Shown here: positions 27,775 through 61,781 of the stretch, piece after piece
Numbering within the stretch: position 1 is the first letter of the stretch
Layout: every line of letters starts with the position of its first letter
Notes under the pieces: model-generated
What the model was told of the DNA's origin: nothing
Seen by the model: only the letters and a program-made list of their open reading frames with translations
The model's database searches: none
Source: Macrostomum lignano
Taxonomy: Eukaryota
NCBI GenBank assembly: GCA_002269645.1
Contig: NIVC01000318.1
Coordinates: 1 to 64,000, forward strand
Direction of reading: 5' to 3'
DNA length: 64,000 nt
Translations under genes and position numbers: made by a program

Positions 27775-28239
<465 letters not shown>

Positions 28240-28279
28240 TGAGAGATTTGTGCGGCTGTGTGGGCTGGAATTCAGAGCT

Positions 28280-28935
28280 AGTGCGTGGGAGGGTTGGTGC
28301 GTGGGAGGGTTGGTGCGTGGGAGGGTTGGTGCGTGGGAGGGTTGGGGTGTGGGTGTAGGAGGGTTGGTGCGTGGGAGGGTTGGTGCGTGGGAGGGTTGGG
28401 GTGTGGGGTGTAGGAGGGTTGGTGCGTGGGAGGGTTTGCGTGTTGGAGGGTTGGGGTGTGAGGGTTGGGGTGTGAGGGTTGGGGTGTGTGAGGGTTGGCG
28501 TGTGGGAGGGTTGGCGTGTGGGAGGGTTGGGGTGTGTGAGGGTTGGGGTGTGTGAGGGTTGGGGTGTGTGAGGGTTGGCGTGTGTGAGGGTTGGCGTGTG
28601 GGAGGGTTGGGGTGTGTGAGGGTTGGCGTGTGTGAGGGTTGGCGTGTGGGAGGGTTGGGGTGTGTGAGGGTTGGGGTGTGTGAGGGTTGGGGTGTGTGAG
28701 GGTTGGCGTGTGTGAGGGTTGGCGTGTGGGAGTTTTGGGGTGTGTGAGGGTTGGGGTGTGTGAGGGTTGGGGTGTGTGAGGGTTGGGGTGTGTGAGGGTT
28801 GGGGTGTGTGAGGGTTGGCGTGTGTGAGGGTTGGCGTGTGTGAGGGTTGGCGTGTGGGAGGGTTGGGGTGTGTGAGGGTTGGCGTGTGGGAGGGTTGGGG
28901 TGTGTGAGGGTTGGCGTGTGGGAGGGTTGGCGTGT
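28280..28935. repeat. 16-bp G-rich minisatellite (GAGGGTTGGSGTGTGK)n
   Basis: Direct periodicity starting ~45 bp after the exon C donor. Confidence 0.92.
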
Positions 28936-29120
28936 GGTTCAACGAGTGGATCAACGAGATTTTTATAGTTTAACAGTGCATGCGTTTCATCCTACTTGTC
29001 AGTAGACGCTTTAAAAACTTGCAAAGACTCTTTAGAATATTTCTGCATTAGAATGCATCCACATACTAAACTGTCATAATAATATAAATGTATTTGTTTG
29101 CAAATCATTTCTCTATGCAG

Positions 29121-29318
29121 GATACTTCAATGACGCGTACAATAATGGACTTGTTCCACTGCGTCCTCGACAAGAGCTAGAAGGAGAGGACACTGAGGAG
29201 CCTCTGGCTCCGCCGCCGCCCCCGCCTCCATCGCGAGCACCGGGATCGAGGGCACCTGTACCGCAGCCACCGCCGCCTCTTTCACCGCCGCTTTCGCCAG
29301 CTTACGAGCCAATTAAAC
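29121..29318 (+). CDS. GFRalpha/Gas1-like receptor, exon D (acidic/proline-rich linker)
   Basis: Acceptor tttctctatgcag, donor c|gtaggt; 198 nt, phase 1/1, open frame YFNDAYNNGLVPLRPRQELEGEDTEEPLAPPPPPPPS..AYEPIK. Confidence 0.75.
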
Positions 29319-29449
29319 GTAGGTCTTTGTATTGGACAAGTTAGCAGGGCCCTGGTGAATAGAAAACCAAAAAATAACGTTTAGTAAATTATTTAGTAAA
29401 TGGTCGTACGCTTGAAAGTAACTCATTTAGTAAACGTTTAGTAAATAAA

Positions 29450-29845
29450 CAACGACGGGAGTGAGGTGGTAGAGCCACCGACCAATGAGATCTGAGAAAG
29501 GACAGGGAGTGAGGTGGTAGAGCCACCGACCAATGAGATCTGAGAAACGACAGGGAGTGAGGTGGGTGAGCCACCGACCAATGAGATCTGAGAAACGACA
29601 GGGAGTGAGGTGGGTGAGCCACCGACCAACGAGAGCTGAGAAAGGGCAGGGAGTGAGGTGGGTGAGCCACCGACCAACGAGATCTGAGAAAGTGCAGGGA
29701 GTGAGGTGGGTGAGCCACCGACCAACGAGATCTGAGAAAGTGCAGGGAGTGAGGTGGGTGAGCCACCGACCAACGAGATCTGAGAAAGGGCAGGGAGTGA
29801 GGTGGGTGAGCCACCGACCAACGAGAGCTGAGAAATTGCAGAGAG
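29450..29845. repeat. 48-bp minisatellite CAGGGAGTGAGGTGGGTGAGCCACCGACCAACGAGATCTGAGAAAGGG
   Basis: About 8 copies inside intron D-E. Confidence 0.9.
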
Positions 29846-29911
29846 TTTAGGTGAGCCAACCGTCAACCGCCAACAGTCAAGAATCTCTCCACCCACCCAC
29901 TCCTCCGTCAG

Positions 29912-30445
29912 CCGCGAACTGTTTCGACGTGTACCGCGGCTGCGCTCGGCACTACAACTGCCTGCAGCGGTTCACAGCCCTGCGCGAGGCCTGCGAGTGG
30001 CGCTCAAACGCCTGCGTGAACTACAGCTTCTGCCTGGCCCAGCTCGAGGCCTTCTACTCCTACGCGGACAGCTTTGCCAAAGACGCCGCCACCTGCCAGT
30101 GCCATTCGGACGATACCGACTGTCTGCAGCAGCTGGAGGCATTCCGGCCGCGCTGCGCCTACGATGTGACCCGGCCGGGTGGCCGGTCCTGCATCCAGCT
30201 GTACGAAACCTGCCAGAACAGCCACAACTGCTTGGCTAAGTACGCGCACCACGAACGGATCTGCAGCGCCAACCAGTGCTCAGCCCCGCCCATCGAGTGC
30301 CACCTGGTGCGCCGGCTTCTGCTCGGCACCATCCTGACTCAGCGATGCTCCTGCAGCCAGCGATCCGACAGCCGGCTGGGACCCGGCAAGATGCGAGAAA
30401 TTTGCGAGGGAATCCGTACCACACTGTCAAACCCTCGATGCCTGC
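29912..30445 (+). CDS. GFRalpha/Gas1-like receptor, exon E (Cys-rich domains 3 and 4)
   Basis: Acceptor ctcctccgtcag, donor c|gtgagt (phase 1/1). Two tandem domains, CFDVYRGCARHYNC..CQC..RPRC and CIQLYETCQNSHNC..CSC..NPRC. Confidence 0.88.
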
Positions 30446-30449
30446 GTGA

Positions 30450-30630
30450 GTCACGTGATCTTGCTTGCGTCGGTCTCGGGTGGTTTGAAGGTCACGTGAT
30501 TTTGTTTGCGTTGGTCTTGGTTGGTTTGAAGGTCACGTGATTTTGTTTGCGTTGGTCTTGGGTGGTTTGAAGGTCACGTGATTTTGTTTGCGTTGGTCTT
30601 GGGTGGTTTGAAGGTCACGTGATCTTGTTG
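30450..30630. repeat. 41-bp minisatellite GTCACGTGATTTTGTTTGCGTTGGTCTTGGGTGGTTTGAAG
   Basis: About 4.5 copies starting immediately at the exon E donor; each has a CACGTG palindrome. Confidence 0.88.
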
Positions 30631-30830
30631 CTTTGGTCGTACGCTTGTAAGTAACTCATACTCTCACTTCTGGACACGCCTATAATAAAGTACATGTAGA
30701 AGACGCGCATAGCGGCTTACTGACCACTACTTTATTTTACATTAGTAAACACGAATAAAAGTGCTGAGATGAGATTAATCAGGTGATGAGATCGATCATC
30801 ATGTCGTTCCAAACCCCCTCATCCCGCCAG

Positions 30831-31803
30831 GCTCCGAGACCCATCTTCCGGTGTCTGGCGTCTCCGGTAGCGACGTCTGCGGCCGCCAGCGCCGACACGG
30901 CCTGCCGTCGGGCCGGCCGCTGCTGCTGGAGCAGCTGGCCTCGCAGCTCGGCAACTCAACGGCCCACGCATCCTGCGATCGAATCTGTCGATGCGTCGAA
31001 GTTGACGAAGTCGGCAGCAGCGGCACCGACTGCGGAGTGTGCATCCAGCCGGCGCCCTCGGCGGCGGTGCAGACGGACGCACTGTGCGTCGGCGGCGGAG
31101 GCCGCGCGTTCGCAGGACGGCAATCGCCGAGGCCCGGTTGCGAGTGTTCGGAGCTTGGCGAGCTCGTCTGTGCGCCGAAGCCGGGCCGGGAGCAGCCGCC
31201 GGACTGTACCTGGGACTCGGCGGCAGCCCCGCCCGCTTGGCCGTTCTCCGCACCGCCGGGGTTCAAGCCCCAGCCGACTGGGGCCGCGTGCTCACCAGCG
31301 TGCTGCGTCGGATCGTCGGCGACGATGCCTGCGTGCTGGAGGCCGTCAAGCAGACGCCCGGCGTCGGCGGCGGCGTCCTGGTCCGCTTGCGCGACTCAAC
31401 GACGAGCAACGGTGGCGTTAGCAGCGCGGCTGACTTTTGCATGCGCTACCTGCGCCTGCTGGCTTCTCTGGTTGCTGGCCGCGCTACCGCGGTGTCGCTG
31501 GAGCCGGAGCTGGCGCATCTGCGTGCCGCTCTGCTCGTTCCCGTCGGCCTTGCGTCTCCGTCGTCGTCGTCTTCATCAGGATCCGATGGTGGCGGTTCAA
31601 CAAAGCTCTCGCCTTCCAGTTGGTTTCAGCTGCAGCAGCAGCAGCCTCAGCTGACTCGAAGGCTCGATCTGGATCAAACCAACGGCGCTATCGGCAAAGG
31701 CGATGGAGCTGTCGGTGGAAATGTCGGATCGGCAGCGACATCCGTGGCCACATTGGCATTAACACTTTGTTGCTCAGCTGCGGCGCTCTTGTTAACATTG
31801 TGA
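30831..31803 (+). CDS. GFRalpha/Gas1-like receptor, terminal exon F (Cys-rich segment, C-terminal domain, GPI-signal-like tail); apparent 1-nt frameshift near 31172-31201
   Basis: Acceptor ccctcatcccgccag (phase 1). The first frame gives SCDRICRC..CGVC..CECSELGELVC. The +2 frame gives GLYLGLGGSPARLAVL..VLTSVLRRIVGDDAC..FCMRYLRLLASLV.. and ends in hydrophobic AATSVATLALTLCCSAAALLLTL-stop. Confidence 0.7.
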
Positions 31804-31919
31804 GCCGCCGCGTGGAAATATTGATACTGAGGTTGAATTTTGAGCGGCTGGTAGTTTCAAGAACTTTTAAAAGTATTATAGACTGATGACTGAATTAAGG
31901 AGCGGAGGTCAATGAGTGT

Positions 31920-34570: not shown

Positions 34571-35139
34571 GGATGAGTCAATTGGGTGAGTCGACCTGAA
34601 AATGAGCCCTAATTTTCCTATACAGAAACTGACTCGGCCTCAGCCGCACACGCTGAATCAACACAGTGAAAGACGTCAACAAAAGCAGGTGCATCAGGGG
34701 TCACCAGCTCCCGCTAGATTAAAGTCACTGAACTTGAGACCTGAATCACAATCACAGATTATCTTGTCACTCTTTGCAAGCCACGCGGAATGAAAGGCCT
34801 CGAATTATTTTGTTTTCATCTTTCGATTCTCCGTTTAGACAAAACATAAAAACATAAAATGAAGCTCTGCACTTCTCTGTTCCCTTCTCTGTCCGTCTGT
34901 CTGTCTTGTATTTTCCTTTCTTCTACTCTTTCCTAAGCCCAATTAAGGGCAAACCGAGACCGGCTGAGGTCGGTGCTGTGCCGGATGCTGTCGGAGTCTG
35001 ACAACCGCTGTGCGACTCGCGTGGAGCTCCTGTCATCACCCAAACTGATTGGGAAGGGATCTCTTCCCTCTTCTGGCCTGACGAAGAGCCTCGGGGGTTG
35101 AAACCGGTCGACAATTAATTACAATAACTCGACACGCAG

Positions 35140-36030: not shown

Positions 36031-36404
36031 CAGTCTTCGTTCCTCAGTCAGAAACAAAATCATCATCACCCGAAAGCCAGAGTCTTATTTGGTCTCTGAT
36101 CTGTGATTGGCCAACTGAGCCGCTCCCAGATTCTCCACTCGTTTCTGGATAAATTCTCGCCCAACTCCGAGATCTGTCTTCGCCTTCAACAGTTTTTCAG
36201 ACAAGAAAAAACTCAAATTCTCTGTTGAAACAGAACCTTCTGCATATCAGCTTAAAGGTAAGGCTGGCCGAACATTTTCAGTAGAATAACATAATGGGAA
36301 CCTCTGCGGGCAAGCCATGCGGCGCTAAGAAACTGGATCTGAAGATTAATTCGTTTGCTACCGAAGCTTAGCTCAGAAGGTCCGACTGAGCTCCATCTCT
36401 CAGT

Positions 36405-37457: not shown

Positions 37458-38729
37458 ATGCCCGTCAAAGGAACCTGCAAAGCTGCGCCGCTGGTGCTGC
37501 TGCTGCTGCTGAGCCTCCAGCTGGCTCAGGCGGCGCCCTCGCGGCCTCGCGACGCGGCCTATCGCTATGCGCCTTCCGAGGCCGACCTGGCGGTGCCCAA
37601 CGGCTCCTACCATCCCGCCGAGCAGGCGAATTTCAAGTGAGTCCTGCTCTGTCTTCGGCCTTTGAGGCGGGGTTCAGCGATTTTTGGTCATTTTTAGTAC
37701 TTCTGAGCCAGCCCATTTCATGATGCCTAGCGACTGGGGCTGCCCAAAACCTTCAAATTATAGAAATCATGGGTTTTGTTTCAGTTTGAGTTTTCAGTTT
37801 CATTTTTTGTCTTTTAGAAACTGATGTTTAAGAGCGTAATTTGTTTTGCACTACTCAGTTATAGTAGTCTAATGAGAGTTTATGTATTTTAAAATAAAAA
37901 CAGCGTGGCCGAATGGAAGCGCAGCGGCTCGAATGACTTCAATGCGGCCCGTCTGCTGGCCAAGCTGGCCGACTTCAAAGCCAAGAATGACTTCTTGACC
38001 CAGCGGATTCGGTGAGAGCCACTGCGGTGTTTACACTTTAAACAGGAGTGTTTAAACTGTAAACATGAGGTGTTTACACTGTAGACAGGGGCGTTTACAC
38101 TGTAGACAGAGGTGTTTAAACTGTAGACAGGGGTGTTTACACTGTAGACAGGGGGTGTTTACACTGTAGACAGGGATGTTTACACTGTAGACAGGGATGT
38201 TTACACTGTAGACAAAGGTGTTTAAACTGTAGACAGGGGTGTTTAAACTGTAGACAGGGGTGTTTACACTGTAGACAGGGGGTGTTTACACTGTAGACAG
38301 GGGTGTTTACACTGTAGACAGAGGGTGTTTAAACTGTAGACAGGGATGTTTAAACTGTAGACAGGGATGTTTACACTGTAGATAAAGGTGTTTAAACTGT
38401 AGACAGGGGTGTTTAAACTGTAGACAGGGGTGTTTACACTGTAGACAGGGGGTGTTTACACTGTAGACAGGGGTGTTTACACTGTAGACAGGGGTGTTTA
38501 CACTGTAGACAGGGTGTTTACACTGTAGACAGGGGGTGTTTACACTGTAGACAGGGATGTTTACACTGTAGACAGGGGTGTTTACACTGTAGACAGAGGG
38601 TGTTTACACTGCAGACAGGAAAGTGCTCACACAGTAAACAGGTGATGATTAAACCGGACAAGCCAACAGGAAAGTCGGGGGTCACAGTTGTCAATCAATA
38701 TCCCTGATCCTCATTGCAGCATGGGCTGA
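37458..38729 (+). CDS. Neuropeptide precursor 1 (NPF/NPY-like architecture; predicted 31-aa SGSNDFNAARLLAKLADFKAKNDFLTQRIRM-amide); exons 37458-37636, 37904-38011, 38720-38729
   Basis: Signal peptide MPVKGTCKAAPLVLLLLLSLQLAQA. Phase-consistent splices aa|gtgagt, cag|c, cg|gtgaga, cattgcag|c. KR cleavage site; ends R-M-G-stop (Gly amide donor). Confidence 0.8.
38025..38625. repeat. ~20-22-bp intronic minisatellite GTGTTTACACTGTAGACAGGG
   Basis: Fills intron 2 of neuropeptide gene 1. Confidence 0.92.
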
Positions 38730-38881
38730 AGATGGAGCCAAGCAAGCCGGAAGGAACCCAGTGCAGCCAGGGAAGCCTTTGTACTCGAGATCGACCACTG
38801 ATTGCAACTTCCTGCTATTACAGAAATCCCAAATTGCAACAAACTCGATGTGGTAGAACGCTGCTGATGAATTAATGAAAA

Positions 38882-38888
38882 TATAAAA
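38882..38888 (+). promoter_or_regulatory. Candidate TATA box (TATAAAA) for neuropeptide gene 2
   Basis: Consensus match ~150 nt upstream of ATG 39034; support is position only. Confidence 0.35.
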
Positions 38889-39033
38889 CAAGAGGACACT
38901 GCTGATCTCACAGCTACACTTGCTTCAAAAAAGCAAATTTAAGTGTTTTAATTTTCATTTCATAAGCAAAGACTGTAAAACTGAAATTACATGCAACCCG
39001 AATAACAAAACCCGAATCTGCTTCAGTTCCAGC

Positions 39034-40295
39034 ATGGCCCGCTCTGGTCACCGATTCAATGGGGCTCTGCTTCCGCTGCGTCTGCTGCTGTGGCTGCTGC
39101 TGCTGGGCCAGCCGGCACCCCAGCTGGCGTTCAGGGCGGAACCGGCAGCTGGGATGGCTCGTGCGATGTCGCTCAGGGACAGCGGCGTTGCCATGGCAAC
39201 TGGGTAAATTAATGGCTCATTCAAACAGTGCTAAAATAGTCGCTCCAACTCTCAAACCTGAGGCGTGCTCACTCTGACACTTGAGACCTGCTCACTCTCA
39301 CACTTGAGACCTGCTCACTCTCACACTTGAGACCTGCTCACTCTCACACTTGAGACTTGCTCACTCTCACACCTGAGACCTGCTCACTCTCACACCTGAG
39401 ACCTACTCACTCTCACACCTGATACCTGCTCACTCTCACACTTGAGACCTGCTCAGTCTCACATCTGAGACCTGCTCACTCTCACACCTGATACCTGCTC
39501 ACTCTCACACCTGAGACCTGCTCACTCTCACACCTGAGACCTGCTCACTCTCACACCTGAGACCTGCTCACTCTCACACCTGAGACCTGCTCACTCTCAC
39601 ACCTGAGACCTGCTCACTCCCACACCTGATACCTGCTCACTCCCACACCTGAGACCTGCTCACTCTCATACCTGAGACCTGCTCACTCTCACACCTGAGA
39701 CCTGCTCACTCTCACACCTGAGACCTGCTCACTCTCACACCTGAGACCTGCTCACTCTCACACCTGAGACCTGCTCACTCCCACACCTGATACCTGCTCA
39801 CTCTCACACCTGAGACCTGCTCACTCTCACACCTGAGACCTGCTCACTCTCACACCTGAGACCTGCTCACTCTCACACCTGAGACCTGCTCACTCTCACA
39901 CCTGAGACCTGCTCACTCTCACACCTGAGACCTGCTCACTCTCACACCTGAGACCTGCTCACTCTCACACCTGAGACCTGCTCACTCTCACACCTGAGAC
40001 CTGCTCACTCTCACACCTGAGACCTGCTCACTCTCACACCTGAGACCTGCTCACTCTCACACCTAGGACCTGCTCACACCTTTTCATTTCAGCGAGCTGT
40101 TTAGCCGCGGTCGCAGAGGGCAGTCAGAAGCTGAGCGGCTGATGGAGTTGCTCAGGCAGTCGTACGCAAGATACAGATTTCTCCGAGAACGAATCAGGTT
40201 CCAATAGTAGAGCTTAAAACTTATTTTCAACATATTTGTTGCACCCTACTGGCAGTAATATGATAAATGAACCATTGAATTTCAGAATGGGCTGA
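39034..40295 (+). CDS. Neuropeptide precursor 2 (paralogue of 1; predicted GQSEAERLMELLRQSYARYRFLRERIRM-amide); exons 39034-39203, 40093-40197, 40286-40295
   Basis: Signal peptide (..ALLPLRLLLWLLLLGQPAPQLA). Splices gg|gtaaat, tttcatttcag|c, ag|gttcca, ttgaatttcag|a. RR cleavage site; the last exon xATGGGCTGA matches gene 1's. Confidence 0.78.
39265..40080. repeat. 23-bp intronic minisatellite CACCTGAGACCTGCTCACTCTCA
   Basis: About 35 copies filling intron 1 of neuropeptide gene 2. Confidence 0.95.
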
Positions 40296-49444: not shown

Positions 49445-49972
49445 TTACCAGTAAGGCGCCGTCTTCAAGCTATATGAAGCAGAATTTGCCTACCAAATGC
49501 GTACATACGCTCTTGTAATGTTAATGTAAGATGGGTGAAGCTTGAAGGGCTTGTATAAATAAATGTGTACTATCTGTAAGATCTGTGCTTAAAGCTTTGC
49601 TTCTGTTAAAAGAGAGCTATAAAAACAGACACTACTTGACAATGGATACAAATGTACATACAACATGTATAACTGATGGAAGCAAGCAGGCGTATTAAGT
49701 GAATCGTGCGCACGAAGACACATGCACTGTATCTGATATTTTAAGGCCAGCCAATAAACAACGAGTATTTTAAAGCAAGAGTGAAAAATTGAAGCTGCAA
49801 TTTCCGTCGTAGCCCCCCACCCCTTCGCGCTGCATGCACTGAGCCGCAGTTGCTGTATTAGTCATGCTAATTAGCGCTCTCTGCAAGCTTTCTGACTGAT
49901 AAGTATACTAATTACTATATATAATAACTGAAATAAAGCTCTACACCCACGCACTACAGCGGTGTGAACAAT

Positions 49973-52900
49973 ATGAACTACAAATTTGTTTTATCGCTAT
50001 CAGCCTGGCTGGTTCATGCTGCATCAGCCGAGTTCCAGTGCTTGGATGCCGATGGCTTTCCTCTGGACTGGTTCGCTCTGCTGAAGCAGCCGCACTCCGG
50101 ACACTACGCCTACGTCAGCTCGAATTCGTCAACCGCCTGGATTCAGCCGGATGGCTGCGACATCACCCGGGATGGCCCCGTGTTCAGCACCGTCAGCCAG
50201 GTCCTGCAGGCCGGCTCCAATGCCGCCGCCGATGTTCTGGCCGCGTACAACGACGAGCCGCCAGAGGACAACAACAGCAGCAGCATCGGCAGCAGCGCGT
50301 TCGGCCACATGAAAGGGCTCGTCGCTTTGAAGTCTGGCCAGAAAGGCTTCTGGCTGATCCACAGCGTGCCAAAGTTCCCGAACATGAGCCTGCATCGCTA
50401 CGAGTACCCGGACACTGGGATGAAATACGGCCAGAGCTTCCTTTGCCTGACCGTGGACAGCGCAAAGATGGCCAACATCATCGGCAGCCAGCTGTTCGTC
50501 TCGCACCCGGACCTCTACAGCCTCAGCGTCAGCCCCGCCGCCGAGGCCGCCTGGCCCAGCTGGGCAGATCTGAAGAAACGGAAGCAGCCACCGAAGGCTT
50601 TGATGAATTCCACTGTCAAGCTGGTGACCTCCGGTGGCCTGTCCGTGATGCACCTGGCCAAGTCTCCGCACCTGAAGCAGGACCTGTATTCTTACCTGTT
50701 GGCTGGTCAGCTTCAGTCGAACATTCAGGTATATTGCTTCTGTGGGATCACATCCAGTGGGATCACTGGAAATGACCCGTTGTATAATGACGTGAATCTC
50801 GCGTTTTACATGTATAGAAAATTAAATAAAGGCCAAACCTCACTTTACTCCGGATCTGAGTTGCACGCATCGAAAATTGCAGTAAAAGGACAGTTGCACT
50901 CGATTTTCTTAGAAATGATCTTAAGGCGGGTAGGGAATCCAGCGGATTAGCAGGATCGCTAGCGCATTTGTACATGTTATTATAGAAAAAGCGGACTTTT
51001 CTCGACTGAATTAGTCTATGGCCAAACCCCATTCAGCTCTAGAGTAGTAAATACACCAGTGATACTACAAATATATGTTCCTTCCGGTTCATTTCTAAGA
51101 AACCAACTGTATAGTGTCCTAATTCTTCCTTAGTTGTCCGTGGTTGCACGTAGAGAATTATCAGATATTTTGTACTGATTTGTAAAAAAATGTGTTTTTT
51201 AGATACTTCTATACTTCAATACTTCTACAAAAGAAGAAGTGCAGTTTTACAAAATTTTTAGTAAATTTTTTGTTTTACATGTAATCGGTAGTTTTGCGTT
51301 TTGTGTTTTACGCAGGTAGAAACCTGGCAGCACGGCAAAGAGCTGCTGAATTCGACATGCAACAGGCGCTACAATGTCACCAAAGTGCTCGATGTTCGCA
51401 TCGGGAACCAGACGCAGTTTAAGTCTACAAAGGACCATTCGAAGTGGTGCGTGACTGCCCAGACTGATGCCAAGCCGCACACGTGCATTGGCGATATGAA
51501 CCGGGCAGAGACGCAGTATCACCGGGGAGGCGGCATCGCTTGCATCGGCCTCGTCGGACTGCACAGTCTGTTTAAAGCGGCCGTGATCCACGACCAGGTG
51601 ATGCTGACTGGGGCAATTGGTTTGGTATTGCAGTTGCTACGAGCTATTATTGGTTGTTCAGCTGTTCAGTGCTTCAGTTAATTAAACCATTTGCTGTTAT
51701 TTCCAACTTAGTAGACAGTGCGTCACCCTCTGGAATATGGTTCCACCTGTTAGACAGTGTGTGTCACCCTCTGGAATATGGTTCCACCTGTTAGACAGTG
51801 TGTGTCACCCTCTGGAATATGGTTCCACCTGTTAGACAGTGTGTGTCACCCTCTGGAATATGGTTCCACCTGTTAGACAGTGTGCGTCACCCTCTGGAAT
51901 ATGGTTCCACCTGTTAGACAGTGTGTGTCACCCTCTGGAATATGGTTCCACCTGTTAGACAGTGTGTGTCACCCTCTGGAATATGGTTCCACCTGTTAGA
52001 CAGTGTGTGTCACCCTCTGGAATATGGTTCCACCTGTTAGACAGTGTGTGTCACCCTCTGGAATATGGTTCCACCTGTTAGACAGTGTGCGTCACCCTCT
52101 GGAATATGGTTCCACCTGTTGGACAGTGTGTGTCACCCTCTGGAATATGGTTTGACCTGTTAGACAGTGTGTGTCACCCTCTGGAATATGGTTCCACCTG
52201 TTGGACAGTGTGTGTCACCCTCTGGAATATGGTTCCACCTGTTAGACAGTGTGTGTCACCCTCTGGAATATGGTTTGACCTGTTAGACAGTGTGTGTCAC
52301 CCTCTGGAATATGGTTCCACCTGTTAGACAGTGTGTGTCACCCTCTGGAATATGGTTCCACCTGTTAGACAGTGTGTGTCACCCTCTGGAATATGGAATT
52401 TCACCTGTTAGACAGTGTGTGTCACCCTCTGGAATATGGAATTTCACCTGTTAGACAGTGTGTGTCACCCTCTGGAATATGGAATTTCACCTGTTAGACA
52501 GTGTGCGTCACCCTCTGGAATATGGTTCCACCTGTTAGACAGTGTGTGTCACCCTCTGGAATATGGTTTGACCTGTTAGACAGTGTGTGTCACCCTCTGG
52601 AATATGGTTCCACCTGTTAGACAGTGTGTGTCACCCTCTGGAATATGGTTCCACCTGTTAGACAGTGTGTGTCACCCTCTGGAATATGGTTCCACCTGTT
52701 AGACAGTGTGTGTCACCCTCTGGAATATGGTTTGACCTGTTAGACAGTGTGTGTCACCCTCTGGAATATGGTTCCACCTGTTAGACAGTGTGTGTCACCC
52801 TCTGGAATATGGTTCCACCTGTTAGACAGTGTGTGTCACCCTCTGGAATATGGTTCCACCTGTTAGACAGTGTGTGTCACCCTCTGGAATATGGTTCCAC

Positions 52901-55056: not shown

Positions 55057-55493
55057 GCCAGGTCAGTCCTGACACAATATTAGCAAGCTCTCAGTCCTGA
55101 CACAATATTAGCTAGCTCTCAGTCCTGACACAATATTAGCAAGCTCTCAGTCCTGACACAATATTAGCTAGCTCTCAGTCCTGACACAATATTAGCCAGC
55201 TCTCAGTCCTGACACAATATTAGCCAGCTCAGTCCTGACAATATTAGACAGCTCAGTCCCGACACAATATTAGCCAGCTCAGTCCTGACACAATATTAGC
55301 CAGCTCAGTCCTGACAATATTAGACAGCTCAGTCCTGACAATATTAGACAGCTCAGTCCTGACACAATATTAGACAGCTCAGTCCTGACACAATATTAGA
55401 CAGCTCAGTCCTGACACAATATTAGCCAGCTCAGTCCTGACACAATATTAGACAGCTCAGTCCTGACACAATCTTGGCAGCTCAGTCCTGACA
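55057..55493. repeat. 26-bp minisatellite CTCAGTCCTGACACAATATTAGCCAG, left part (Polinton target array)
   Basis: Same unit resumes at 60960; 24- and 28-bp variants present. Confidence 0.95.
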
Positions 55494-55662
55494 AGTAGTA
55501 GGGCGAATTATGATACTGCCGCACTAGCACTGGCGAGATAGGCGGCAATGCAAATGTATAGGGAAAAATACACTGCGGAGATATGAACCCTATCTCTGTG
55601 CATTGGGGACGGCTAAGCACTGCAGAGATATGAGCTCTATCTCTGTGCATTGGGGACGGCTA
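55494..55662 (+). repeat. Left terminal inverted repeat (169 bp)
   Basis: Exact reverse complement of 60791-60959 by manual comparison. Confidence 0.93.
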
Positions 55663-56068
55663 AGCACTGCAGAGATATGAGCTCTATCTCTGTGCATTGG
55701 GGACGGCTAAGCACTGCGGAGATATGAGCTCTATCTCTGTGCACTGGGGACGGCTAAGCACTGCAGAGATATGAGCTCTATCTCTGTGCATTGGGGACGG
55801 CTAAGCACTGCAGAGATATGAGCTCTATCTCTGTGCATTGGGGACGGCTAAGCACTGCGGAGATGTGGGCTCTATCTCTGTGCATTGGGGACGGCTAAGC
55901 ACTGCGGAGATATGAGCTCTATCTCTGTGCATTGGGGACGGCTAAGCACTGCAGAGATATGAGCTCTATCTCTGTGCATTGGGGACGGCTAAGCACTGCA
56001 GAGATATGAGCTCTATCTCTGTGCATTGGGGACGGCTAAGCACTGCAGAGATATGAGCTCTATCTCTG
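55571..56068 (+). repeat. Subterminal 47-bp tandem array GCACTGCAGAGATATGAGCTCTATCTCTGTGCATTGGGGACGGCTAA (~10.5 copies)
   Basis: Direct copies; each unit has an imperfect hairpin AGAGATA..GAGCTC..TATCTCT. Confidence 0.93.
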
Positions 56069-56260
56069 CTTAACACTGGAGTGATAGGAGGAGAGGCGGC
56101 CTATCTCTTTACACTGGAGATGGTTAACACTGCAGAGATAGGAGGAGAGGCGGCCTATCTCTTTGCATTGGGGTGGTTAACACTGCAGAGATAGGATGGA
56201 GTGGGTTAGCTTAGCTGAATGAATGTTAATCTATGTAATTGGAAATAATGTTTGCGAAAG

Positions 56261-56323
56261 AGCCAATCACAGAGCCCGGAGTGGGATGGGTGGTTTGGGG
56301 TGGTTCGGTCGAGGGTATATAAG
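56261..56323 (+). promoter_or_regulatory. Candidate promoter: CCAAT box (56263-56267) and TATA box (TATATAAG, 56316-56323)
   Basis: Canonical motifs and spacing, ~105 nt upstream of ATG 56428. Confidence 0.6.
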
Positions 56324-56427
56324 CCCCGAAATTGACAAGAAAGAATTCTCAATTTTTCAAATCCAAAATTTCATCCGAACTTTTCCTCAGCTTTTAACTT
56401 TTGTGAGTTTTCAATTGCGAAAGGAAA

Positions 56428-57201
56428 ATGGACATCTGTGAAGGCTATAAGGCACAAGTCCAGGAGTTTGAAGGACAAAAATTTATCGCTATTCGCAAGT
56501 TTTACCGACACGGCAGCACGGCAAGTCTGAAGCCAGGCGTCCCAGGATTCAACCTGAATGTTCACCAATGGAAGAAATTGAAGGAGGTGAAACGCTCACT
56601 TGTGATTTCTGCACGCAACAACGAGCCCAAGGTCGTGAAACTCGGCTTCGATAAGTTTGTGGAAGTCAAAGGCGGCATCATTTGGCTCAAACGGCTGCCG
56701 GAAGATTGCTGCGAGGAGTTTTTGAGACGAAACGCCGTACCACTGACTCCGCCGCTGTGGCAGAAGCTCTGGAAAATCGCCTCCTGGATCGACGGTCAGC
56801 TGGTGGCTCCCTTGAGGAACTCAATGCAGTACGAGCTGGAGTCTGATGAGGAAGAGGAGGAAGAGGACAAGAAGCTCAAGTTGGAGGCTGACCAGGACAC
56901 GAAGCCCATAATGGAGACTGATGAGGGCGGAGAGCATGCTGATGACGAGGACGTTAGCTCGCCCACAAGGCCGCGCATTGTGACTGAGCCTATCACATCC
57001 ACACCGATACCTTCGGTTGATTCTGATGCTGGACTGCTTCCGCAGCGGGACACCAACCTTGAGGAAGATCCGGTGTGGTATCAGTTCAGGGCGCATGCAG
57101 CGGCTTCGACGGTGAGCAGCAGCAGCAGGAAGCGAAAGCTGCCATTTCAACTTCGTCGGCAGGACGCGATGAGGCTGCCCAATGTTCGCTTTGATAACTG
57201 A
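56428..57201 (+). CDS. PC4/Sub1-like ssDNA-binding protein (probably two PC4 repeats plus an acidic tail)
   Basis: AQVQEFEGQKFIAIRKFY..LKPGVPGFNLNVHQWKKLKE matches the PC4 pattern V..F.G...IDIRE.Y...KPG.KGISL...QW..LK; a second degenerate copy follows. Confidence 0.7.
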   Translation: MDICEGYKAQVQEFEGQKFIAIRKFYRHGSTASLKPGVPGFNLNVHQWKKLKEVKRSLVISARNNEPKVVKLGFDKFVEVKGGIIWLKRLPEDCCEEFLRRNAVPLTPPLWQKLWKIASWIDGQLVAPLRNSMQYELESDEEEEEEDKKLKLEADQDTKPIMETDEGGEHADDEDVSSPTRPRIVTEPITSTPIPSVDSDAGLLPQRDTNLEEDPVWYQFRAHAAASTVSSSSRKRKLPFQLRRQDAMRLPNVRFDN

Positions 57202-57527
57202 ACAGCTAGAATGCTTTGAATGCATTGGACTAACTAAATTACTTTTAGCTTGCACATGATTATCCAGCCTATATCTGACGGCACTATGCTGTTTTTTATC
57301 TCTGCTATTTCTGAAATGCTAGTGTGCGAGTGTTTTAGTGTTCGTTTTTATGGATTGTTTGCTTTCGGAAAATACACCGACTGTTACGATGTTAGAGGTT
57401 TCAATCTGACAGTAATAAATTAATTTGCCACTCGTTTCTCTATCATTTAATTGGAATATAAATTTCTACTTAAGAAAAAATACTGTACAGCTAGAGCAGG
57501 TGGATAGGCACGTATCTTGATAAACCC

Positions 57528-58598
57528 ATGATGGAGAAAATTTATTTGAAACCTGAGCAACCGGCCAGTTTTTCTTGTGCCTCAAAGTTGCTGCATGAAG
57601 TGAGGCAAAGAGGTGATCGAATATCTGCAAAGAGCATTGAGCAGTGGCTCAGCGAGCAGCCAGTGCACACTCTGCACAAGCCAGCTAGGAGGCGATATCC
57701 AAGGGCCCCAATCATAGTGCGCGCAATCGATGATCAGTGGGAACTTGACTTAGTGGAAATGATTCCATTCGCAAAGCATAATAAAGGCTACAAATATATT
57801 CTCACATGCATTGACGTGCTCTCAAAATGTGCTTGGGCCAAGGCACTGAAAAATAAATCTGCTGCAGAAGTGAAGTCAGCATTCGAGAGCATACTGAGAA
57901 GTTCAAAGCGACAGCCACGCACAGTTCGCACAGATCAGGGGAAGGAATTTATCAACTCCACTTTCCGTCAATACTGCATTGACAGAGGGATTCTGGCTTT
58001 CCCAACTAACAGCGAGCAGAAGGCGGCTGTCATTGAGCGATGGAATCGGACTCTGAAAAGTAGAATGTGGCGCTACTTCACCTACAAGAGCACACTGCAC
58101 TGGCTTGATGTACTGCCTAAGCTGGTAAAATCCTACAACAATACCTACCACAGAAGCATCAAAATGGCACCCACTAGTGTCTGCAAAGAGAATGAATCTG
58201 AAGTGTGGATGAACCTGTACGATGGAAAAGCAGCCGAGACTCTAGAAAAATTAAAGAAGCCTAAGTTCGCTGAAAACCAGTCAGTGAGAATTTCCAATGC
58301 TCCACGGCTATTCAAAAAGGGATACAAAGCGAGCTGGAGTGAGGAAGTGTACACCGTGGTGAGCAGAGCCCCAAAACATTACCCCTACATGTACAAGATT
58401 AAAGACATGCGGGGGCAAGAGATTCGAGGACTCTTCCATGAGCACGAGCTGCAGGCTGTTCCGGACTCACAGCGGCTGTATGTGATTGAGAAGATCCTGA
58501 AAACGGAGAAGCGGAAGGGAAAGATTCGCTATCTGGTGAAGTGGGCCGGCTACGACTCGACTGGCTGGGTGGATGAAAAAGACTTAAGAAAGGTTTAG
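57528..58598 (+). CDS. Retroviral-like (DDE) integrase with C-terminal chromodomain-like region
   Basis: WELDLVEM (D), VRTDQGKEF (D), KAAVIERWNRTLK (E), YNNTYHRSIKMAP; C-terminal YVIEKIL..YLVKWAGYD..WVDEKDL. Intact 356-aa ORF. Confidence 0.95.
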   Translation: MMEKIYLKPEQPASFSCASKLLHEVRQRGDRISAKSIEQWLSEQPVHTLHKPARRRYPRAPIIVRAIDDQWELDLVEMIPFAKHNKGYKYILTCIDVLSKCAWAKALKNKSAAEVKSAFESILRSSKRQPRTVRTDQGKEFINSTFRQYCIDRGILAFPTNSEQKAAVIERWNRTLKSRMWRYFTYKSTLHWLDVLPKLVKSYNNTYHRSIKMAPTSVCKENESEVWMNLYDGKAAETLEKLKKPKFAENQSVRISNAPRLFKKGYKASWSEEVYTVVSRAPKHYPYMYKIKDMRGQEIRGLFHEHELQAVPDSQRLYVIEKILKTEKRKGKIRYLVKWAGYDSTGWVDEKDLRKV

Positions 58599-58617
58599 CT
58601 TTGGCACATCCCTCATC

Positions 58618-59445
58618 ATGAAGTTTATCTTTATAATGCGAACTATTTTGATTAACAGTGAGCATGCTGAAGGTACTCCTTGTGACTTTAATTTTTACCT
58701 GTCTTCACCTATTTACTTGGATCGAAATGTGGACTATGAGGCAGGTCTGGCTGAAATCCATCTGCCTGCTGCATGGTTCAATGTTGACGAGCCTTACTGC
58801 TTCACTGTCTCAGATGGAAGAGAGCATGAGGCCCTGGTTCTTCAACCCGGACGCTTTGCTAGAGTGGAGGAGCTGGTGGAGCGGCTGAATGAGCTGCTGG
58901 CCAACTCTGATTCGCTGTTCTTTGATGCAATGAGTGACAGGGAGTCTGAGATGGAGGCTGATGAGTCCGGCCTGATGGGGCGTAGTGGCAACAGGGAATT
59001 TGGTATGAAGTTCGAAATCCGCAACTCACGAACTGTGGTGCACAACAACACTGCGAGAGCAGAGCTGTTTCTTCCATCCAGCAAAATTCTGCATTGGCTG
59101 GGATTTGGAAACCAGGCTGTGAAAATCCAGCCAGGGAGCCGCGTGTCCGAGCATTGCACTGGCTGCCCGCGCACCAGCTTAATCAATGTGCACTGCAGTA
59201 TCGTTGAGTCAACTAATTGCAACTGGAGCTCCTTGTTGAGAACAGTTGGAATGAAAGCCGGCATTGAATGGGGCAACTATCAAACAAAAATATTTAAGAA
59301 AACAATATTCTTCCCGATTCAACGAATCAGTCTTCTCCACAGCATTCGAGTTCAGCTCCGTGACATCTATGGTTGCCCACTGATTGCACAGACTCACAGC
59401 CCTGTTCTGCTTACAGTTCAAATTCAGGAGAAACGCATTCAATGA
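58618..59445 (+). CDS. Putative Polinton minor capsid (penton-like) protein
   Basis: N-terminal INS....TPCDFNFYLSSPIYL...YEAGLAEIHLP and C-terminal INVHCSIVE..LLRTV..FFPIQ..IRVQLRD..G resemble Polinton mCP motifs; lies between integrase and MCP. Confidence 0.7.
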   Translation: MKFIFIMRTILINSEHAEGTPCDFNFYLSSPIYLDRNVDYEAGLAEIHLPAAWFNVDEPYCFTVSDGREHEALVLQPGRFARVEELVERLNELLANSDSLFFDAMSDRESEMEADESGLMGRSGNREFGMKFEIRNSRTVVHNNTARAELFLPSSKILHWLGFGNQAVKIQPGSRVSEHCTGCPRTSLINVHCSIVESTNCNWSSLLRTVGMKAGIEWGNYQTKIFKKTIFFPIQRISLLHSIRVQLRDIYGCPLIAQTHSPVLLTVQIQEKRIQ

Positions 59446-59819
59446 ACTACCAGCAGCTAATCCAGCAATATTCGGGGGTGAGGACAGGACACGAAAAGCC
59501 TGCACTCTATGGCTGTGGGAGCTTCCCAGGGATCATGACATACCAGCCTCCGCCAGCGGCTATATCATCATCATCAGCCTCGACGCTTAGCAACGTCAGG
59601 CGCAAAAGAAATACTGAAGCAAGTCCGAAACGATTGAAGAAAAAGAAGGGCACCCGAAAGGCAACTGGTGGAAATCGCAGTAAGAGGTCGAGCAAGGCTA
59701 GTGGGAAAAAGCTTAAGAATAGGAAGACGAAAGCAAAGAAGAATAGAGCAGGCGGAGGAAAGCGAAAGCAAAAAGTCAGCAAGAAAACTGTGAAACGCGT
59801 GCTCGACTCTCTGTCATAG
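59442..59819 (+). CDS. Small Lys/Arg-rich protein (putative DNA-condensing core protein)
   Basis: 125 aa from ATG 59442, overlapping the upstream stop (ATGA); very basic C-terminal two-thirds. Confidence 0.6.
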   Translation: MNYQQLIQQYSGVRTGHEKPALYGCGSFPGIMTYQPPPAAISSSSASTLSNVRRKRNTEASPKRLKKKKGTRKATGGNRSKRSSKASGKKLKNRKTKAKKNRAGGGKRKQKVSKKTVKRVLDSLS

Positions 59820-59821
59820 AC

Positions 59822-60793
59822 ATGGCTTACGGATTCAATCCCAGACTTGATTTATTTAAGACGCCCGTTCTACAAACCTGCATTGAAAAAGCTACTTATG
59901 TTGATATTCACCCAGTTAATTCCATTGTTGCAAACTCTCCCATTGAATTTGACTGCCACCAATCTGCCGATGAATACACAGATCTGCTGAATTCTTTTCT
60001 TTATATTCGCTGCCGCCTTGTGAGACTGGATGGGGGTTTGCTGAGGGAGGATGTTCGAGATGGAGATGGCATCATCACCGAGCGCAGAGACAGTGACGTG
60101 CACCCAGAAAATTTTGTTCTGTCTACAGTCTTCTCAGATGTAATTGTGAGCATTAACCAGCGAGTGGTGTCTGGTGGAGACCAGCTCTATCCCTACCATG
60201 CGTACTTCAAAGCACTAATGAGCTCATCCGATGCCCAGCAACTAAAACTTTACCCTGCTGGCTTCCTGGAGCCGGACTCGGCAGCTGAAGAGCACACGGA
60301 GAGCCACAGGGAATCCCGATGGATGGAGTATGCGGGGCCGCTCTTCAGCGATGTTTTCCAGTGCCCAGTGTTTCTGCTAAACAATCTGCACTTGAACATC
60401 AAACTGGTGCCCAGCGATGGGGCCTTTGCCATCAGAACCCCGAATGCAAACAACGCGGCATACCGAATGGAAATCTCTCACTGCATTCTGCATCTTCGCC
60501 GAGTCAAAGTGGTGCCCCACATCAGCCTGGCCCATGAGCAGGGGCTGACAAACCAAAATGCACTGTATCCCGTCGAGCGAACTGAAATGCAGAACTTCAT
60601 CCTACCCCAGGGTATTCAGTCAAAAAACATTGAAGGATTCACTCATGGAAAATTGCCGAAGTTCATCATGCTGGCCTTCGTGAGCCACCGAGCATTCAAC
60701 GGTCATCATCACGCGAGCCCGTTCCAGTTCCAGAGCTTCAACCTTAGCCGATTGGCTCTAAAGAAAGGTGGGGAAACCGTGTGCCACGGCTAG
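59822..60793 (+). CDS. Polinton major capsid protein, C-terminally truncated by the right TIR
   Basis: LDLFKTPVLQTCIE..YVDIHPVNSI...SPIEF....DEYTDL.NSFLY.R....DG and YPYHAY, PKFIMLAFV..AFNG....PF.FQ.FN match the Polinton MCP pattern. The stop TAG is the first 3 nt of the TIR. Confidence 0.82.
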   Translation: MAYGFNPRLDLFKTPVLQTCIEKATYVDIHPVNSIVANSPIEFDCHQSADEYTDLLNSFLYIRCRLVRLDGGLLREDVRDGDGIITERRDSDVHPENFVLSTVFSDVIVSINQRVVSGGDQLYPYHAYFKALMSSSDAQQLKLYPAGFLEPDSAAEEHTESHRESRWMEYAGPLFSDVFQCPVFLLNNLHLNIKLVPSDGAFAIRTPNANNAAYRMEISHCILHLRRVKVVPHISLAHEQGLTNQNALYPVERTEMQNFILPQGIQSKNIEGFTHGKLPKFIMLAFVSHRAFNGHHHASPFQFQSFNLSRLALKKGGETVCHG

Positions 60794-60959
60794 CCGTCCC
60801 CAATGCACAGAGATAGAGCTCATATCTCTGCAGTGCTTAGCCGTCCCCAATGCACAGAGATAGGGTTCATATCTCCGCAGTGTATTTTTCCCTATACATT
60901 TGCATTGCCGCCTATCTCGCCAGTGCTAGTGCGGCAGTATCATAATTCGCCCTACTACT
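60791..60959 (-). repeat. Right terminal inverted repeat (169 bp)
   Basis: Reverse complement of 55494-55662; holds only ~2 of the 47-bp units. Confidence 0.93.
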
Positions 60960-61781
60960 CTGACACAATATTAGCCAGCTCAGTCCTGACACAATATTAG
61001 CCAGCTCAGTCCTGACACAATATTAGCCAGCTCAGTCCTGACAATATTAGACAGCTCAGTCCTGACACAATATTAGACAGCTCAGTCCTGACACAATATT
61101 AGACAGCTCAGTCCTGACACAATATTAGACAGCTCAGTCCTGACACAATATTAGCCAGCTCAGTCCTGACACAATATTAGCCAGCTCAGTCCTGACAATA
61201 TTAGACAGCTCAGTCCTGACACAATCTTGGCAGCTCAGTCCTGACACAATATTAGCCAGCTCAGTCCTGACACAATATTAGACAGCTCAGTCCTGACACA
61301 ATATTAGACAGCTCAGTCCTGACACAATATTAGCCAGCTCAGTCCTGACACAATATTAGCCAGCTCAGTCCTGACAATATTAGACAGCTCAGTCCTGACA
61401 CAATCTTGGCAGCTCAGTCCTGACACAATATTAGCCAGCTCAGTCCTGACACAATATTAGCCAGCTCTCAGTCCTGACACAATATTAGCCAGCTCAGTCC
61501 TGACACAATATTAGCCAGCTCAGTCCCGACACAATATTAGCCAGCTCAGTCCTGACACAATATTAGCCAGCTCAGTCCCGACACAATATTAGCCAGCTCA
61601 GTCCTGACACAATATTAGCCAGCTCAGTCCTGACACAATATTAGCCAGCTCTCAGTCCTGACACAATATTAGCCAGCTCTCAGTCCTGACACAATATTAG
61701 CCAGCTCAGTCCTGACACAATATTAGCTAGCTCAGTCCTGACACAATATTAGCTAGCTCAGTCCTGACACAATATTGGCAG
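60960..61781. repeat. 26-bp minisatellite CTCAGTCCTGACACAATATTAGCCAG, right part
   Basis: Continuation of the 55057-55493 array after the TSD. Confidence 0.95.

What the first reader, a model, noticed from the sequence alone, without database searches (positions are those of the whole stretch)
37458..40295. Tandem paralogues encoding unusual ~30-aa RIRM-amide peptides
Seen: predicted peptide regions align ungapped (NAARLLAKLADFKAKNDFLTQRIRMG vs EAERLMELLRQSYARYRFLRERIRMG). Both follow a dibasic site (KR, RR), share a three-exon phase-2/phase-2 structure and end in the same 9-nt coding tail ATGGGCTGA. Established: NPF peptides usually end RxRF-amide or RxRY-amide. Met in that position is atypical, and I do not recognise this as a named family. 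Inference: a new amphipathic-helix peptide subfamily, possibly with its own receptor.
Basis: partly seen in the sequence, partly recalled or inferred. Interest (0 to 1): 0.72.

Follow-up and report, generated by a model that had tools for sequence, protein, structure and literature searches.

The report
Flatworm NPF-like peptide genes ending Met-amide
Two neighbouring genes in the flatworm Macrostomum lignano, plus a third copy elsewhere in its genome, encode secreted precursors of roughly 30-residue hormone-like peptides that end in Arg-x-Arg-Met-amide; they have the diagnostic gene layout of neuropeptide Y/F genes but almost none of their sequence, so they look like an unnamed, strongly diverged branch of a known hormone family.

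Summary
The window is Macrostomum lignano DNA.

- **The genes.** Gene 1 (37458-38729) and gene 2 (39034-40295) are tandem, three-exon, GT-AG genes with two phase-2 introns. Each encodes a signal peptide, a spacer, a dibasic site, a 31- or 28-residue peptide, then Gly-stop.
- **Public annotation.** The gene 1 product is identical to the NCBI 'hypothetical protein' BOX15_Mlig030474g1. Gene 2 is not annotated in the public assembly record I could read.
- **Third paralogue.** Mlig025860, on another contig, has the same structure and ends QRVRMG. Its peptide region gives dN/dS about 0.13 against gene 1, while the propeptide has diverged.
- **For NPY/NPF descent.** In all three genes the last intron splits the Arg codon between its second and third base, just before the terminal residue. 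This is the published hallmark of NPY/NPF genes.
- **Against NPY/NPF descent.** Upstream of RxR-Met-Gly there is no detectable NPF similarity by Pfam, hhalign or an anchored PSSM. Amphipathicity is no better than in shuffled sequences.
- **Precedents.** Planarian NPY-11 ends RPRL-amide, planarian NPY-7 ends Gly-stop, and short RM-amide peptides have been seen by mass spectrometry.

Verdict: these are real, probably amidated peptide precursors, most likely a diverged NPF-type subfamily. Interest is moderate.

The parts
34949..35032 (+). Candidate non-coding 5' exon of gene 1. It is read as ...MLSE(S/F)DNRCATRVELL in the public run-on models P0002, P0005 and P0006. Approximate limits.
   Evidence: tblastn of the N-terminal parts of P0002/P0006 against the window. 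In those models it is spliced to the acceptor just upstream of the gene 1 ATG.
36166..36257 (+). Alternative candidate non-coding 5' exon of gene 1. It is read as SEICLRLQQFF...LLHISLK in model P0003. Approximate limits.
   Evidence: tblastn; P0003 sequence.
37458..37636 (+). Gene 1 coding exon 1. It holds the start codon, the signal peptide (about residues 1-25, MPVKGTCKAAPLVLLLLLSLQLAQA) and the N-terminal spacer. It ends with 2 bases of codon 60 (phase-2 donor CAA|GTGAGT).
   Evidence: The product is identical to NCBI BOX15_Mlig030474g1. AlphaFold2 predicts a helix at residues 10-24.
37637..37903 (+). Gene 1 intron 1 (267 nt, phase 2, GT-AG).
37904..38011 (+). Gene 1 coding exon 2. It holds the Lys65-Arg66 cleavage site (37917-37922) and the mature peptide from Ser67 (37923). 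It ends with CG of the Arg96 codon.
   Evidence: The peptide region is under purifying selection against paralogue g3 (dN/dS about 0.13).
38012..38719 (+). Gene 1 intron 2 (708 nt, phase 2). It splits the Arg96 codon as CG|C and is almost filled by a 21-bp minisatellite (38026-38619).
   Evidence: The position matches the NPY/NPF hallmark intron.
38720..38729 (+). Gene 1 terminal mini-exon C|ATG GGC TGA. It supplies the third base of Arg96, Met97, Gly98 (amide donor) and the stop codon.
   Evidence: The same junction is used in models P0001, P0002 and P0003.
38730..39033 (+). Gene 1 3' region and 304-nt spacer to gene 2. It contains a splice acceptor (AG at 39025-39026, exon from 39027) 7 nt upstream of the gene 2 ATG.
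   Evidence: The chimeric public models P0004, P0005 and P0006 join gene 1 donors 37636 or 38011 to 39027. No AATAAA or ATTAAA lies downstream of the gene 1 stop.
39034..39203 (+). Gene 2 coding exon 1. It holds the start codon, the signal peptide (Leu-rich core LLPLRLLLWLLLL) and a spacer. It ends with 2 bases of codon 57 (phase 2).
   Evidence: It is present in public models P0004-P0006.
39204..40092 (+). Gene 2 intron 1 (889 nt, phase 2), almost filled by a 23-bp minisatellite (39248-40077).
40093..40197 (+). Gene 2 coding exon 2. It holds the R-G-R-R cleavage site (Arg64-Arg65 at 40112-40117) and the mature peptide from Gly66 (40118). It ends with AG of the Arg92 codon.
40198..40285 (+). 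Gene 2 intron 2 (88 nt, phase 2). It splits the Arg92 codon as AG|A.
40286..40295 (+). Gene 2 terminal mini-exon A|ATG GGC TGA (Met93, Gly94, stop).
   Evidence: The 10 bases are identical to the terminal mini-exon of paralogue g3 in L002.

Best explanation
Genes 1 and 2, and a third paralogue elsewhere in the Macrostomum lignano genome, are genuine prepropeptide genes.

Proposed processing, all inferred:
1. The signal peptide is removed.
2. A prohormone convertase cuts after KR (gene 1) or RGRR (gene 2).
3. Gly is the last encoded residue, so peptidylglycine alpha-amidating enzyme can act directly, without carboxypeptidase trimming.
4. The products are single helical peptides: SGSNDFNAARLLAKLADFKAKNDFLTQRIRM-NH2 (31 aa) and GQSEAERLMELLRQSYARYRFLRERIRM-NH2 (28 aa).

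They most likely act as neuropeptides or peptide hormones on a G-protein-coupled receptor.

Evolutionarily they are most likely a strongly diverged, Macrostomum-lineage branch of the NPY/NPF superfamily. That branch kept the family's diagnostic intron and the R-x-R-X-amide end, replaced the terminal aromatic residue by Met, and lost the rest of the NPF consensus.

Shown: gene structures, paralogy, purifying selection on the peptide region, and public gene models with the same splice junctions. Inferred: cleavage, amidation, neuronal expression, receptor class, and descent from NPF.
For: Gene structure and paralogy:
- Intact ORFs with canonical GT-AG introns of identical phase in both genes.
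- The gene 1 product equals NCBI BOX15_Mlig030474g1 from the RNA-seq-guided Mlig_3_7 annotation.
- Models P0002 and P0003 from another assembly use the same exon 2 to mini-exon junction.
- The two genes are paralogous: BLASTP E = 9e-5, and the exon structure is shared.

Third paralogue (P0007/P0008, locus L002):
- It has the same three-exon, phase-2/phase-2 structure, the CG|A split Arg codon, and the mini-exon A ATG GGC TGA.

Selection:
- Gene 1 versus g3 peptide region: dS about 1.2, dN about 0.15, dN/dS about 0.13.
- Gene 1 and g3 are about 72% identical in the peptide and about 25% identical in the signal and propeptide part. This is the usual pattern for a bioactive peptide.
- Gene 1 and gene 2 are saturated at synonymous sites. 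Gene 2 nevertheless keeps its ORF, splice sites, signal peptide, dibasic site and terminal Gly.

Link to NPY/NPF:
- The intron lies between the second and third base of the Arg codon before the last residue. [quoted passage not shown]
- PrRP/sNPF genes differ in this feature.

Flatworm precedents:
- NPY-11 ends RPRL-amide and shares the intron.
- NPY-7 ends Gly-stop.
- NPY-3, NPY-4 and NPY-10 have an N-terminal spacer plus KR.
- RM-amide peptides have been confirmed by mass spectrometry.

Other:
- An M. lignano PC2 homologue is expressed in the nervous system.
- AlphaFold2 predicts a helix at residues 74-97 of the gene 1 precursor.
Against: - No PF00159 (pancreatic hormone / NPY) hit even at E <= 10, whereas canonical flatworm, mollusc and arthropod NPFs carry it.
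- hhalign against planarian NPYs finds nothing.
- In a C-terminally anchored PSSM built from 18 NPFs, the 20 residues upstream of RxRXG score -29, -21 and -25 bits, like shuffled sequences (p = 0.44, 0.18, 0.29). True NPFs score +10 to +50 in leave-one-out tests, including the atypical NPY-11.
- The mature peptides contain no proline, so there is no PP-fold N-terminus.
- An extra intron lies in the propeptide.
- No homologue outside M. lignano was found among 1.84 billion representative proteins.
- Gene 2 is not annotated in the public assembly record. Only its exon 1 appears in public models, and only in chimeric ones.
- The two near-identical copies of gene 2 differ by 3 non-synonymous and 0 synonymous changes, all outside the mature peptide.
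- No peptide, expression or receptor data were available.
Confidence: 0.6

Rival explanations
1. The genes are real amidated-peptide precursors, but they form a lineage-specific family unrelated to NPY/NPF. On this view the Arg-codon intron and the RxR-X-Gly end are coincidence or convergence.
For: There is no sequence similarity to NPF beyond the last five residues. There is no proline-rich N-terminus, and an extra propeptide intron is present. No homologues were found outside M. lignano. Flatworms have many lineage-restricted peptide families, including ones ending in RM-amide.
Against: The position and phase of the intron are exact in all three paralogues. With two introns in about 290 coding bases, one landing at that single position by chance has a probability of roughly 1% (my own arithmetic). 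The RxR spacing matches NPF. It does not match the planarian RL/RM-amides, which carry Arg at positions -2 and -5.
Confidence: 0.25
2. The products are secreted cationic helical peptides with a non-neuronal role, such as antimicrobial, gland or seminal-fluid peptides, rather than neuropeptides.
For: Each peptide has a net side-chain charge of +3, a predicted helix and an amidated end. No expression data were available to place them in neurons.
Against: The hydrophobic moment is not above that of shuffled sequences (p = 0.15-0.81), which argues against membrane-active amphipathic helices. The architecture of one peptide per precursor, a dibasic site and a Gly end, together with the NPY-type intron, is typical of hormone precursors.
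Confidence: 0.08
3. Gene 2 specifically is a silent or decaying duplicate, and only gene 1 and the dispersed paralogue g3 are functional.
For: Gene 2 is not called in the transcript-guided public annotation. No public model contains its exons 2-3. There are 3 non-synonymous and 0 synonymous differences between the two near-identical copies.
Against: Synonymous sites between genes 1 and 2 are saturated, yet gene 2 keeps a 94-codon ORF, four canonical splice sites, a signal peptide, the RGRR site, FL..RIRMG and the terminal Gly, in both copies. The three differences all lie outside the mature peptide. Overall divergence between the copies is about 1% in coding and non-coding DNA alike, so the 3:0 count has no statistical weight. 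An 830-bp minisatellite in intron 1 is the kind of repeat that breaks transcript assemblies.
Confidence: 0.15

Closest known systems
NPY/NPF superfamily, especially the expanded flatworm set (Schmidtea mediterranea npy-1 to npy-11; Collins et al. 2010, PMC2953531)
   Same: One long peptide (28-31 aa) per precursor, with a C-terminal helix. The end is R-x-R-X-Gly. The intron lies between the second and third base of the Arg codon preceding the last residue. Flatworm members already include a non-aromatic end (NPY-11, RPRL-amide), a Gly-stop end (NPY-7), and N-terminal spacers with KR (NPY-3, NPY-4, NPY-10).
   Different: The terminal residue is Met and the motif is RIR/RVR instead of RPR. The Y-L-x-x-L-N-x-Y core is absent, and there is no PF00159 match. 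The mature peptides contain no proline. There is an additional phase-2 intron in the propeptide and no C-terminal flanking peptide.
Planarian 'RL/RMamide' peptides (Smed spp-1, spp-4, spp-5, npp-1, mpl-1/2, ppl-1)
   Same: They are flatworm peptides with an Arg-Met-amide end. Some have been confirmed by mass spectrometry, for example GLRILRM-amide and AYWASRM-amide.
   Different: They are 6-9 residues long, occur in several copies per precursor, and are flanked by dibasic sites. Their Arg spacing differs (positions -2 and -5, not -2 and -4). Their gene structure was not compared.
PrRP / sNPF-type peptides
   Same: They carry an Arg-containing amidated C-terminus and are distantly related to NPY/NPF.
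   Different: Their conserved intron is phase 1 and lies in the N-terminal or central part of the peptide, not in the C-terminal Arg codon (PMC7314547).

Membership tests
NPY/NPF superfamily | [quoted passage not shown] | tested here: met
   The split is CG|C in gene 1, AG|A in gene 2 and CG|A in paralogue g3. The feature is defined.
NPY/NPF superfamily | C-terminal R-x-R-F/Y followed by an amidation Gly | tested here: not met
   R-I-R-M-G and R-V-R-M-G: the R-x-R motif and the Gly are present, but the terminal residue is Met, not aromatic. A precedent for a non-aromatic end exists in Smed NPY-11, RPRL-amide.
NPY/NPF superfamily | Sequence match to the family profile (Pfam PF00159, or the conserved Y-L-x-x-L-N-x-Y helix core) | tested here: not met
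   No Pfam hit at E <= 10. hhalign found no alignment. Anchored BLOSUM and PSSM scores for the upstream 20 residues are indistinguishable from shuffled sequences. Gene 2 alone keeps Tyr and Leu at the positions of NPY Tyr27 and Leu30; I noted this by eye and it is not significant.
NPY/NPF superfamily | Single peptide of about 30-40 residues with a C-terminal alpha-helix | tested here: met
   The predicted peptides are 31, 28 and 29 residues. AlphaFold2 predicts a helix at residues 74-97 of the gene 1 precursor, with pLDDT about 65-75.
NPY/NPF superfamily | Proline-rich N-terminal segment (PP-fold) | tested here: not met
   None of the three mature peptides contains a proline.
NPY/NPF superfamily | Activates an NPY/NPF-type GPCR | not testable with these tools
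   No receptor data are available. This needs heterologous expression assays.
Flatworm RL/RMamide short peptides | Multiple copies of 6-9-residue peptides flanked by dibasic sites in one precursor | tested here: not met
   Each precursor carries a single 28-31-residue peptide at its extreme C-terminus. The planarian precursors are shown.
Flatworm RL/RMamide short peptides | C-terminal Arg-Leu or Arg-Met followed by Gly | tested here: met
   All three genes end ...R-M-G.
Generic amidated neuropeptide precursor | Signal peptide, dibasic cleavage site, C-terminal Gly, and conservation concentrated in the peptide | tested here: met
   Actual cleavage and amidation were not tested.

The most novel reading that the evidence does not exclude
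The RxRM-amides are the macrostomorph descendants of NPF. They kept only the gene architecture and the R-x-R-X-amide end, and their cognate receptor(s) co-evolved with them. This would show that the C-terminal aromatic amide, usually treated as indispensable for NPY-family receptor recognition, can be replaced by Met in nature. In addition, the two tandem genes may be co-transcribed and resolved through the acceptor 7 nt upstream of the gene 2 ATG, that is, an operon-like pair of neuropeptide genes.
Probability: 0.3. Interest if true: 0.6.

Novelty: new variant of a known kind. Interest (0 to 1): 0.45.

Why it matters
Macrostomum lignano is a transgenic, RNAi-amenable flatworm model. In planarians an NPY-family peptide (NPY-8) controls reproductive maturation.

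A three-gene family has the NPY/NPF gene hallmark but a Met-amide end and an otherwise unrecognisable sequence. This has three consequences:
- It extends the known range of the superfamily.
- It gives a natural test of how much of the peptide an NPY-type receptor needs.
- It shows that homology searches based on RF/RY-amide or on Pfam miss such members. Gene 1 and the third paralogue are labelled only 'hypothetical' or 'secreted protein', and gene 2 is not annotated.

The finding is still a prediction about one lineage, without peptide, expression or receptor data.

Tried and rejected
- **Look-up of the spliced precursors in the assembly index.** I worked around this through P0001 and P0008.
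- **First literature search.** It was swamped by 'formamide'.
- **Searches for the locus tags and UniProt ids in papers.** They found nothing.
- **McVeigh et al. 2009 and Koziol et al. 2016.** These are the two papers most likely to have named a Macrostomum family. They are not held, so prior naming cannot be fully excluded.
- **Selection test between the window and the public copy L001.** There is no power: divergence is about 1% in coding and non-coding DNA alike.
- **Search for a third tandem copy in the window.** None was found.
- **Search for a gene 2-like neighbour next to g3.** None was found within 10 kb.
- **Synteny between L002 and the window by tblastx.** Only repeats matched.
- **Search for canonical M. 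lignano NPFs with a planarian NPY profile.** None was returned, but the method is limited by its word index and by the E <= 10 cut-off, so this is inconclusive.
- **Amphipathic-helix idea.** Rejected on the hydrophobic moment.
- **Membership of the planarian RL/RMamide family.** Rejected on architecture.
Full report
**Source of the window.** The window is eukaryotic DNA, very rich in minisatellites. A profile of the two predicted precursors retrieved only Macrostomum lignano proteins. The best hit is 100% identical over all 98 residues of the gene 1 product: NCBI 'hypothetical protein BOX15_Mlig030474g1'. The contig that carries it is NIVC01000016.1 of assembly GCA_002269645.1, fetched as locus L001. 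It is collinear with the window and about 99% identical in unique DNA, but the minisatellite copy numbers differ. The sequenced DV1 line carries a duplicated large chromosome, so near-identical second copies are expected.

**Check of the observation.**
- Gene 1 has coding exons 37458-37636, 37904-38011 and 38720-38729.
- Gene 2 has coding exons 39034-39203, 40093-40197 and 40286-40295.
- All four introns are GT-AG and phase 2.
- The products are MPVKG...EWKR|SGSNDFNAARLLAKLADFKAKNDFLTQRIRMG* (98 aa) and MARSG...SRGRR|GQSEAERLMELLRQSYARYRFLRERIRMG* (94 aa).
- The terminal mini-exon motif AG-N-ATGGGN-stop occurs exactly twice in the window, at the two predicted places.

**Evidence that the splice model is used.** The Mlig_3_7 annotation is derived from a genome-guided RNA-seq assembly, and its gene 1 product equals mine. 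Two UniProt models from a different assembly also cross the exon 2 to mini-exon junction. P0003 ends ...QRIRMG. P0002 carries a one-base frameshift but continues into the sequence 3' of the TGA. If the last intron were retained, the reading frames would end QRIR* in gene 1 and RIRFQ* in gene 2. Neither reading supplies an amidation Gly, so no hidden RF-amide alternative exists (read directly).

**A third paralogue.** An exhaustive HMMER scan of 1.84 billion representative proteins found only M. lignano sequences. Among them is P0007 (UniProt A0A1I8I379), and P0008 (BOX15_Mlig025860g3) is a close variant. Its locus, L002 on contig NIVC01003608.1, shows the same three coding exons and two phase-2 introns. 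The last intron splits an Arg codon (CG|A), and the mini-exon is A ATG GGC TGA. Its peptide is GGSFDAAKVLAKLAELKAKNDFLTQRVRM, followed by Gly.

- Gene 1 and this paralogue (g3) are about 72% identical in the peptide region. In the signal and propeptide region they are about 25% identical.
- Over the last 27 codons dS is about 1.2 and dN about 0.15, giving dN/dS about 0.13.
- This is direct evidence that the frame is translated and that the peptide is the constrained part.

Gene 1 and gene 2 are saturated at synonymous sites, so their duplication is older. Gene 2 has nevertheless kept its ORF, splice sites, signal peptide, RGRR site and FL..RIRMG end, which argues for function. Gene 2 is not called in the public annotation. 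Only its exon 1 appears in public models.

[quoted passage not shown] It is an intron between the second and third base of the Arg codon preceding the C-terminal Phe or Tyr. PrRP/sNPF genes differ in this respect. All three M. lignano genes have this intron.

The planarian NPY family supplies precedents for each oddity:
- NPY-11 ends RPRL-amide and is classed as 'atypical'.
- NPY-7 ends Gly-stop.
- NPY-3, NPY-4 and NPY-10 have a spacer plus KR before the peptide.

Against membership:
- Pfam PF00159 does not match even at E <= 10, although it matches canonical NPFs.
- hhalign finds nothing.
- In a C-terminally anchored PSSM from 18 NPFs, the 20 residues upstream of RxRXG score like shuffled sequences. 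Every true NPF scores +10 to +50 bits, including NPY-11.

The family therefore meets the gene-structure criterion, half meets the C-terminal-motif criterion, and fails the sequence criterion.

Met-amide itself is not exotic in flatworms. Planarians have a large 'RL/RMamide' group, with GLRILRM-amide and AYWASRM-amide seen by mass spectrometry. Those peptides are short, occur in multiple copies per precursor, and have a different Arg spacing.

**Physical properties.** AlphaFold2 predicts a signal-peptide helix and a single helix over residues 74-97 of the gene 1 precursor, at moderate confidence. The rest is disordered. The helical hydrophobic moment of the three peptides is not higher than that of shuffled versions, for whole peptides and for 11- and 18-residue windows. 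Planarian NPFs are borderline higher than their shuffles. 'Amphipathic' is therefore not supported, which also weakens an antimicrobial-peptide reading.

**Most likely mechanism.**
1. Signal peptidase removes the signal peptide.
2. A prohormone convertase cleaves after KR or RR. An M. lignano PC2 homologue is expressed in the nervous system.
3. The terminal Gly is amidated directly.

The products would be 28-31-residue RxRM-amides that act on a GPCR, probably of the NPY/NPF type or derived from it. The cleavage, amidation, expression site and receptor are all inferences.

**Gene arrangement.** Only 304 nt separate the gene 1 stop from the gene 2 ATG. Three public models splice gene 1 donors (37636 or 38011) to an acceptor at 39027, 7 nt upstream of the gene 2 ATG. 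In M. lignano about 30% of genes are spliced-leader trans-spliced and about 15% lie in operons with short spacers. Co-transcription of the pair, with 39027 as a trans-splice acceptor, is therefore plausible but untested. In the window the 38011-to-39027 join would be in frame, reading ...QRIR-SS-MARSG....

**Verdict.** These are real genes and a real paralogous family of three, most likely amidated peptide-hormone precursors. The best reading is a strongly diverged NPF-type subfamily, that is, a new variant of a known kind. I found no name for it in the sources I could reach. The two key flatworm neuropeptide surveys could not be read, so prior naming cannot be fully excluded.

Noticed in passing
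window 55494-60959: A mobile element of about 5.47 kb with 169-nt, 100% perfect terminal inverted repeats (55494-55662 / 60791-60959). Its ORFs carry a PC4 domain (56428-57201) and an rve integrase core plus chromodomain (57528-58598). Two further ORFs have no Pfam match (58618-59445, 59822-60793). The element sits inside a 26-bp minisatellite that has the same unit on both sides (55057-55493, 60960-61776), so it looks like a recent insertion.
   Followed up: partly
window 39025-39027 (and donors 37636, 38011): Public models P0004, P0005 and P0006 splice gene 1 exons to an acceptor 7 nt upstream of the gene 2 start codon. In the window the exon 2 to 39027 join is in frame with gene 2. This suggests read-through transcription, an operon-like pair, or a spliced-leader acceptor.
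   Followed up: partly
window 39034-40295; L001 11366-12738: Gene 2 has no called gene in the public Mlig_3_7 record, although its ORF and splice sites are intact in both copies. The two copies differ by G10A, L15M and S61I, all outside the mature peptide.
   Followed up: yes
window 38026-38619, 39248-40077; L002 13190-13600: The large introns of all three paralogues are almost entirely tandem repeats: a 21-bp unit, a 23-bp unit and (GATA)n. The window as a whole carries dozens of such arrays.
   Followed up: no
window 27805-31900 (+): An upstream neighbour has two GDNF/GAS1-type cysteine-rich domains, like a GDNF-family receptor (ORFs 27805-28242 and 29851-30540). The public model P0006 (882 aa) runs this gene on into genes 1 and 2.
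   Followed up: no
window 49964-50950 (+); 62586-63975 (-): A single-ORF DNase II homologue (Pfam E = 6e-49), and exons of a COP9 signalosome subunit 7-like gene with PCI and CSN7a helix I domains.
   Followed up: no
window 40196-40215: If intron 2 of gene 2 were retained, the frame would read ...RERIRFQ-stop. That is an RF end, but without an amidation Gly. The equivalent read-through in gene 1 gives ...QRIR-stop (read).
   Followed up: no
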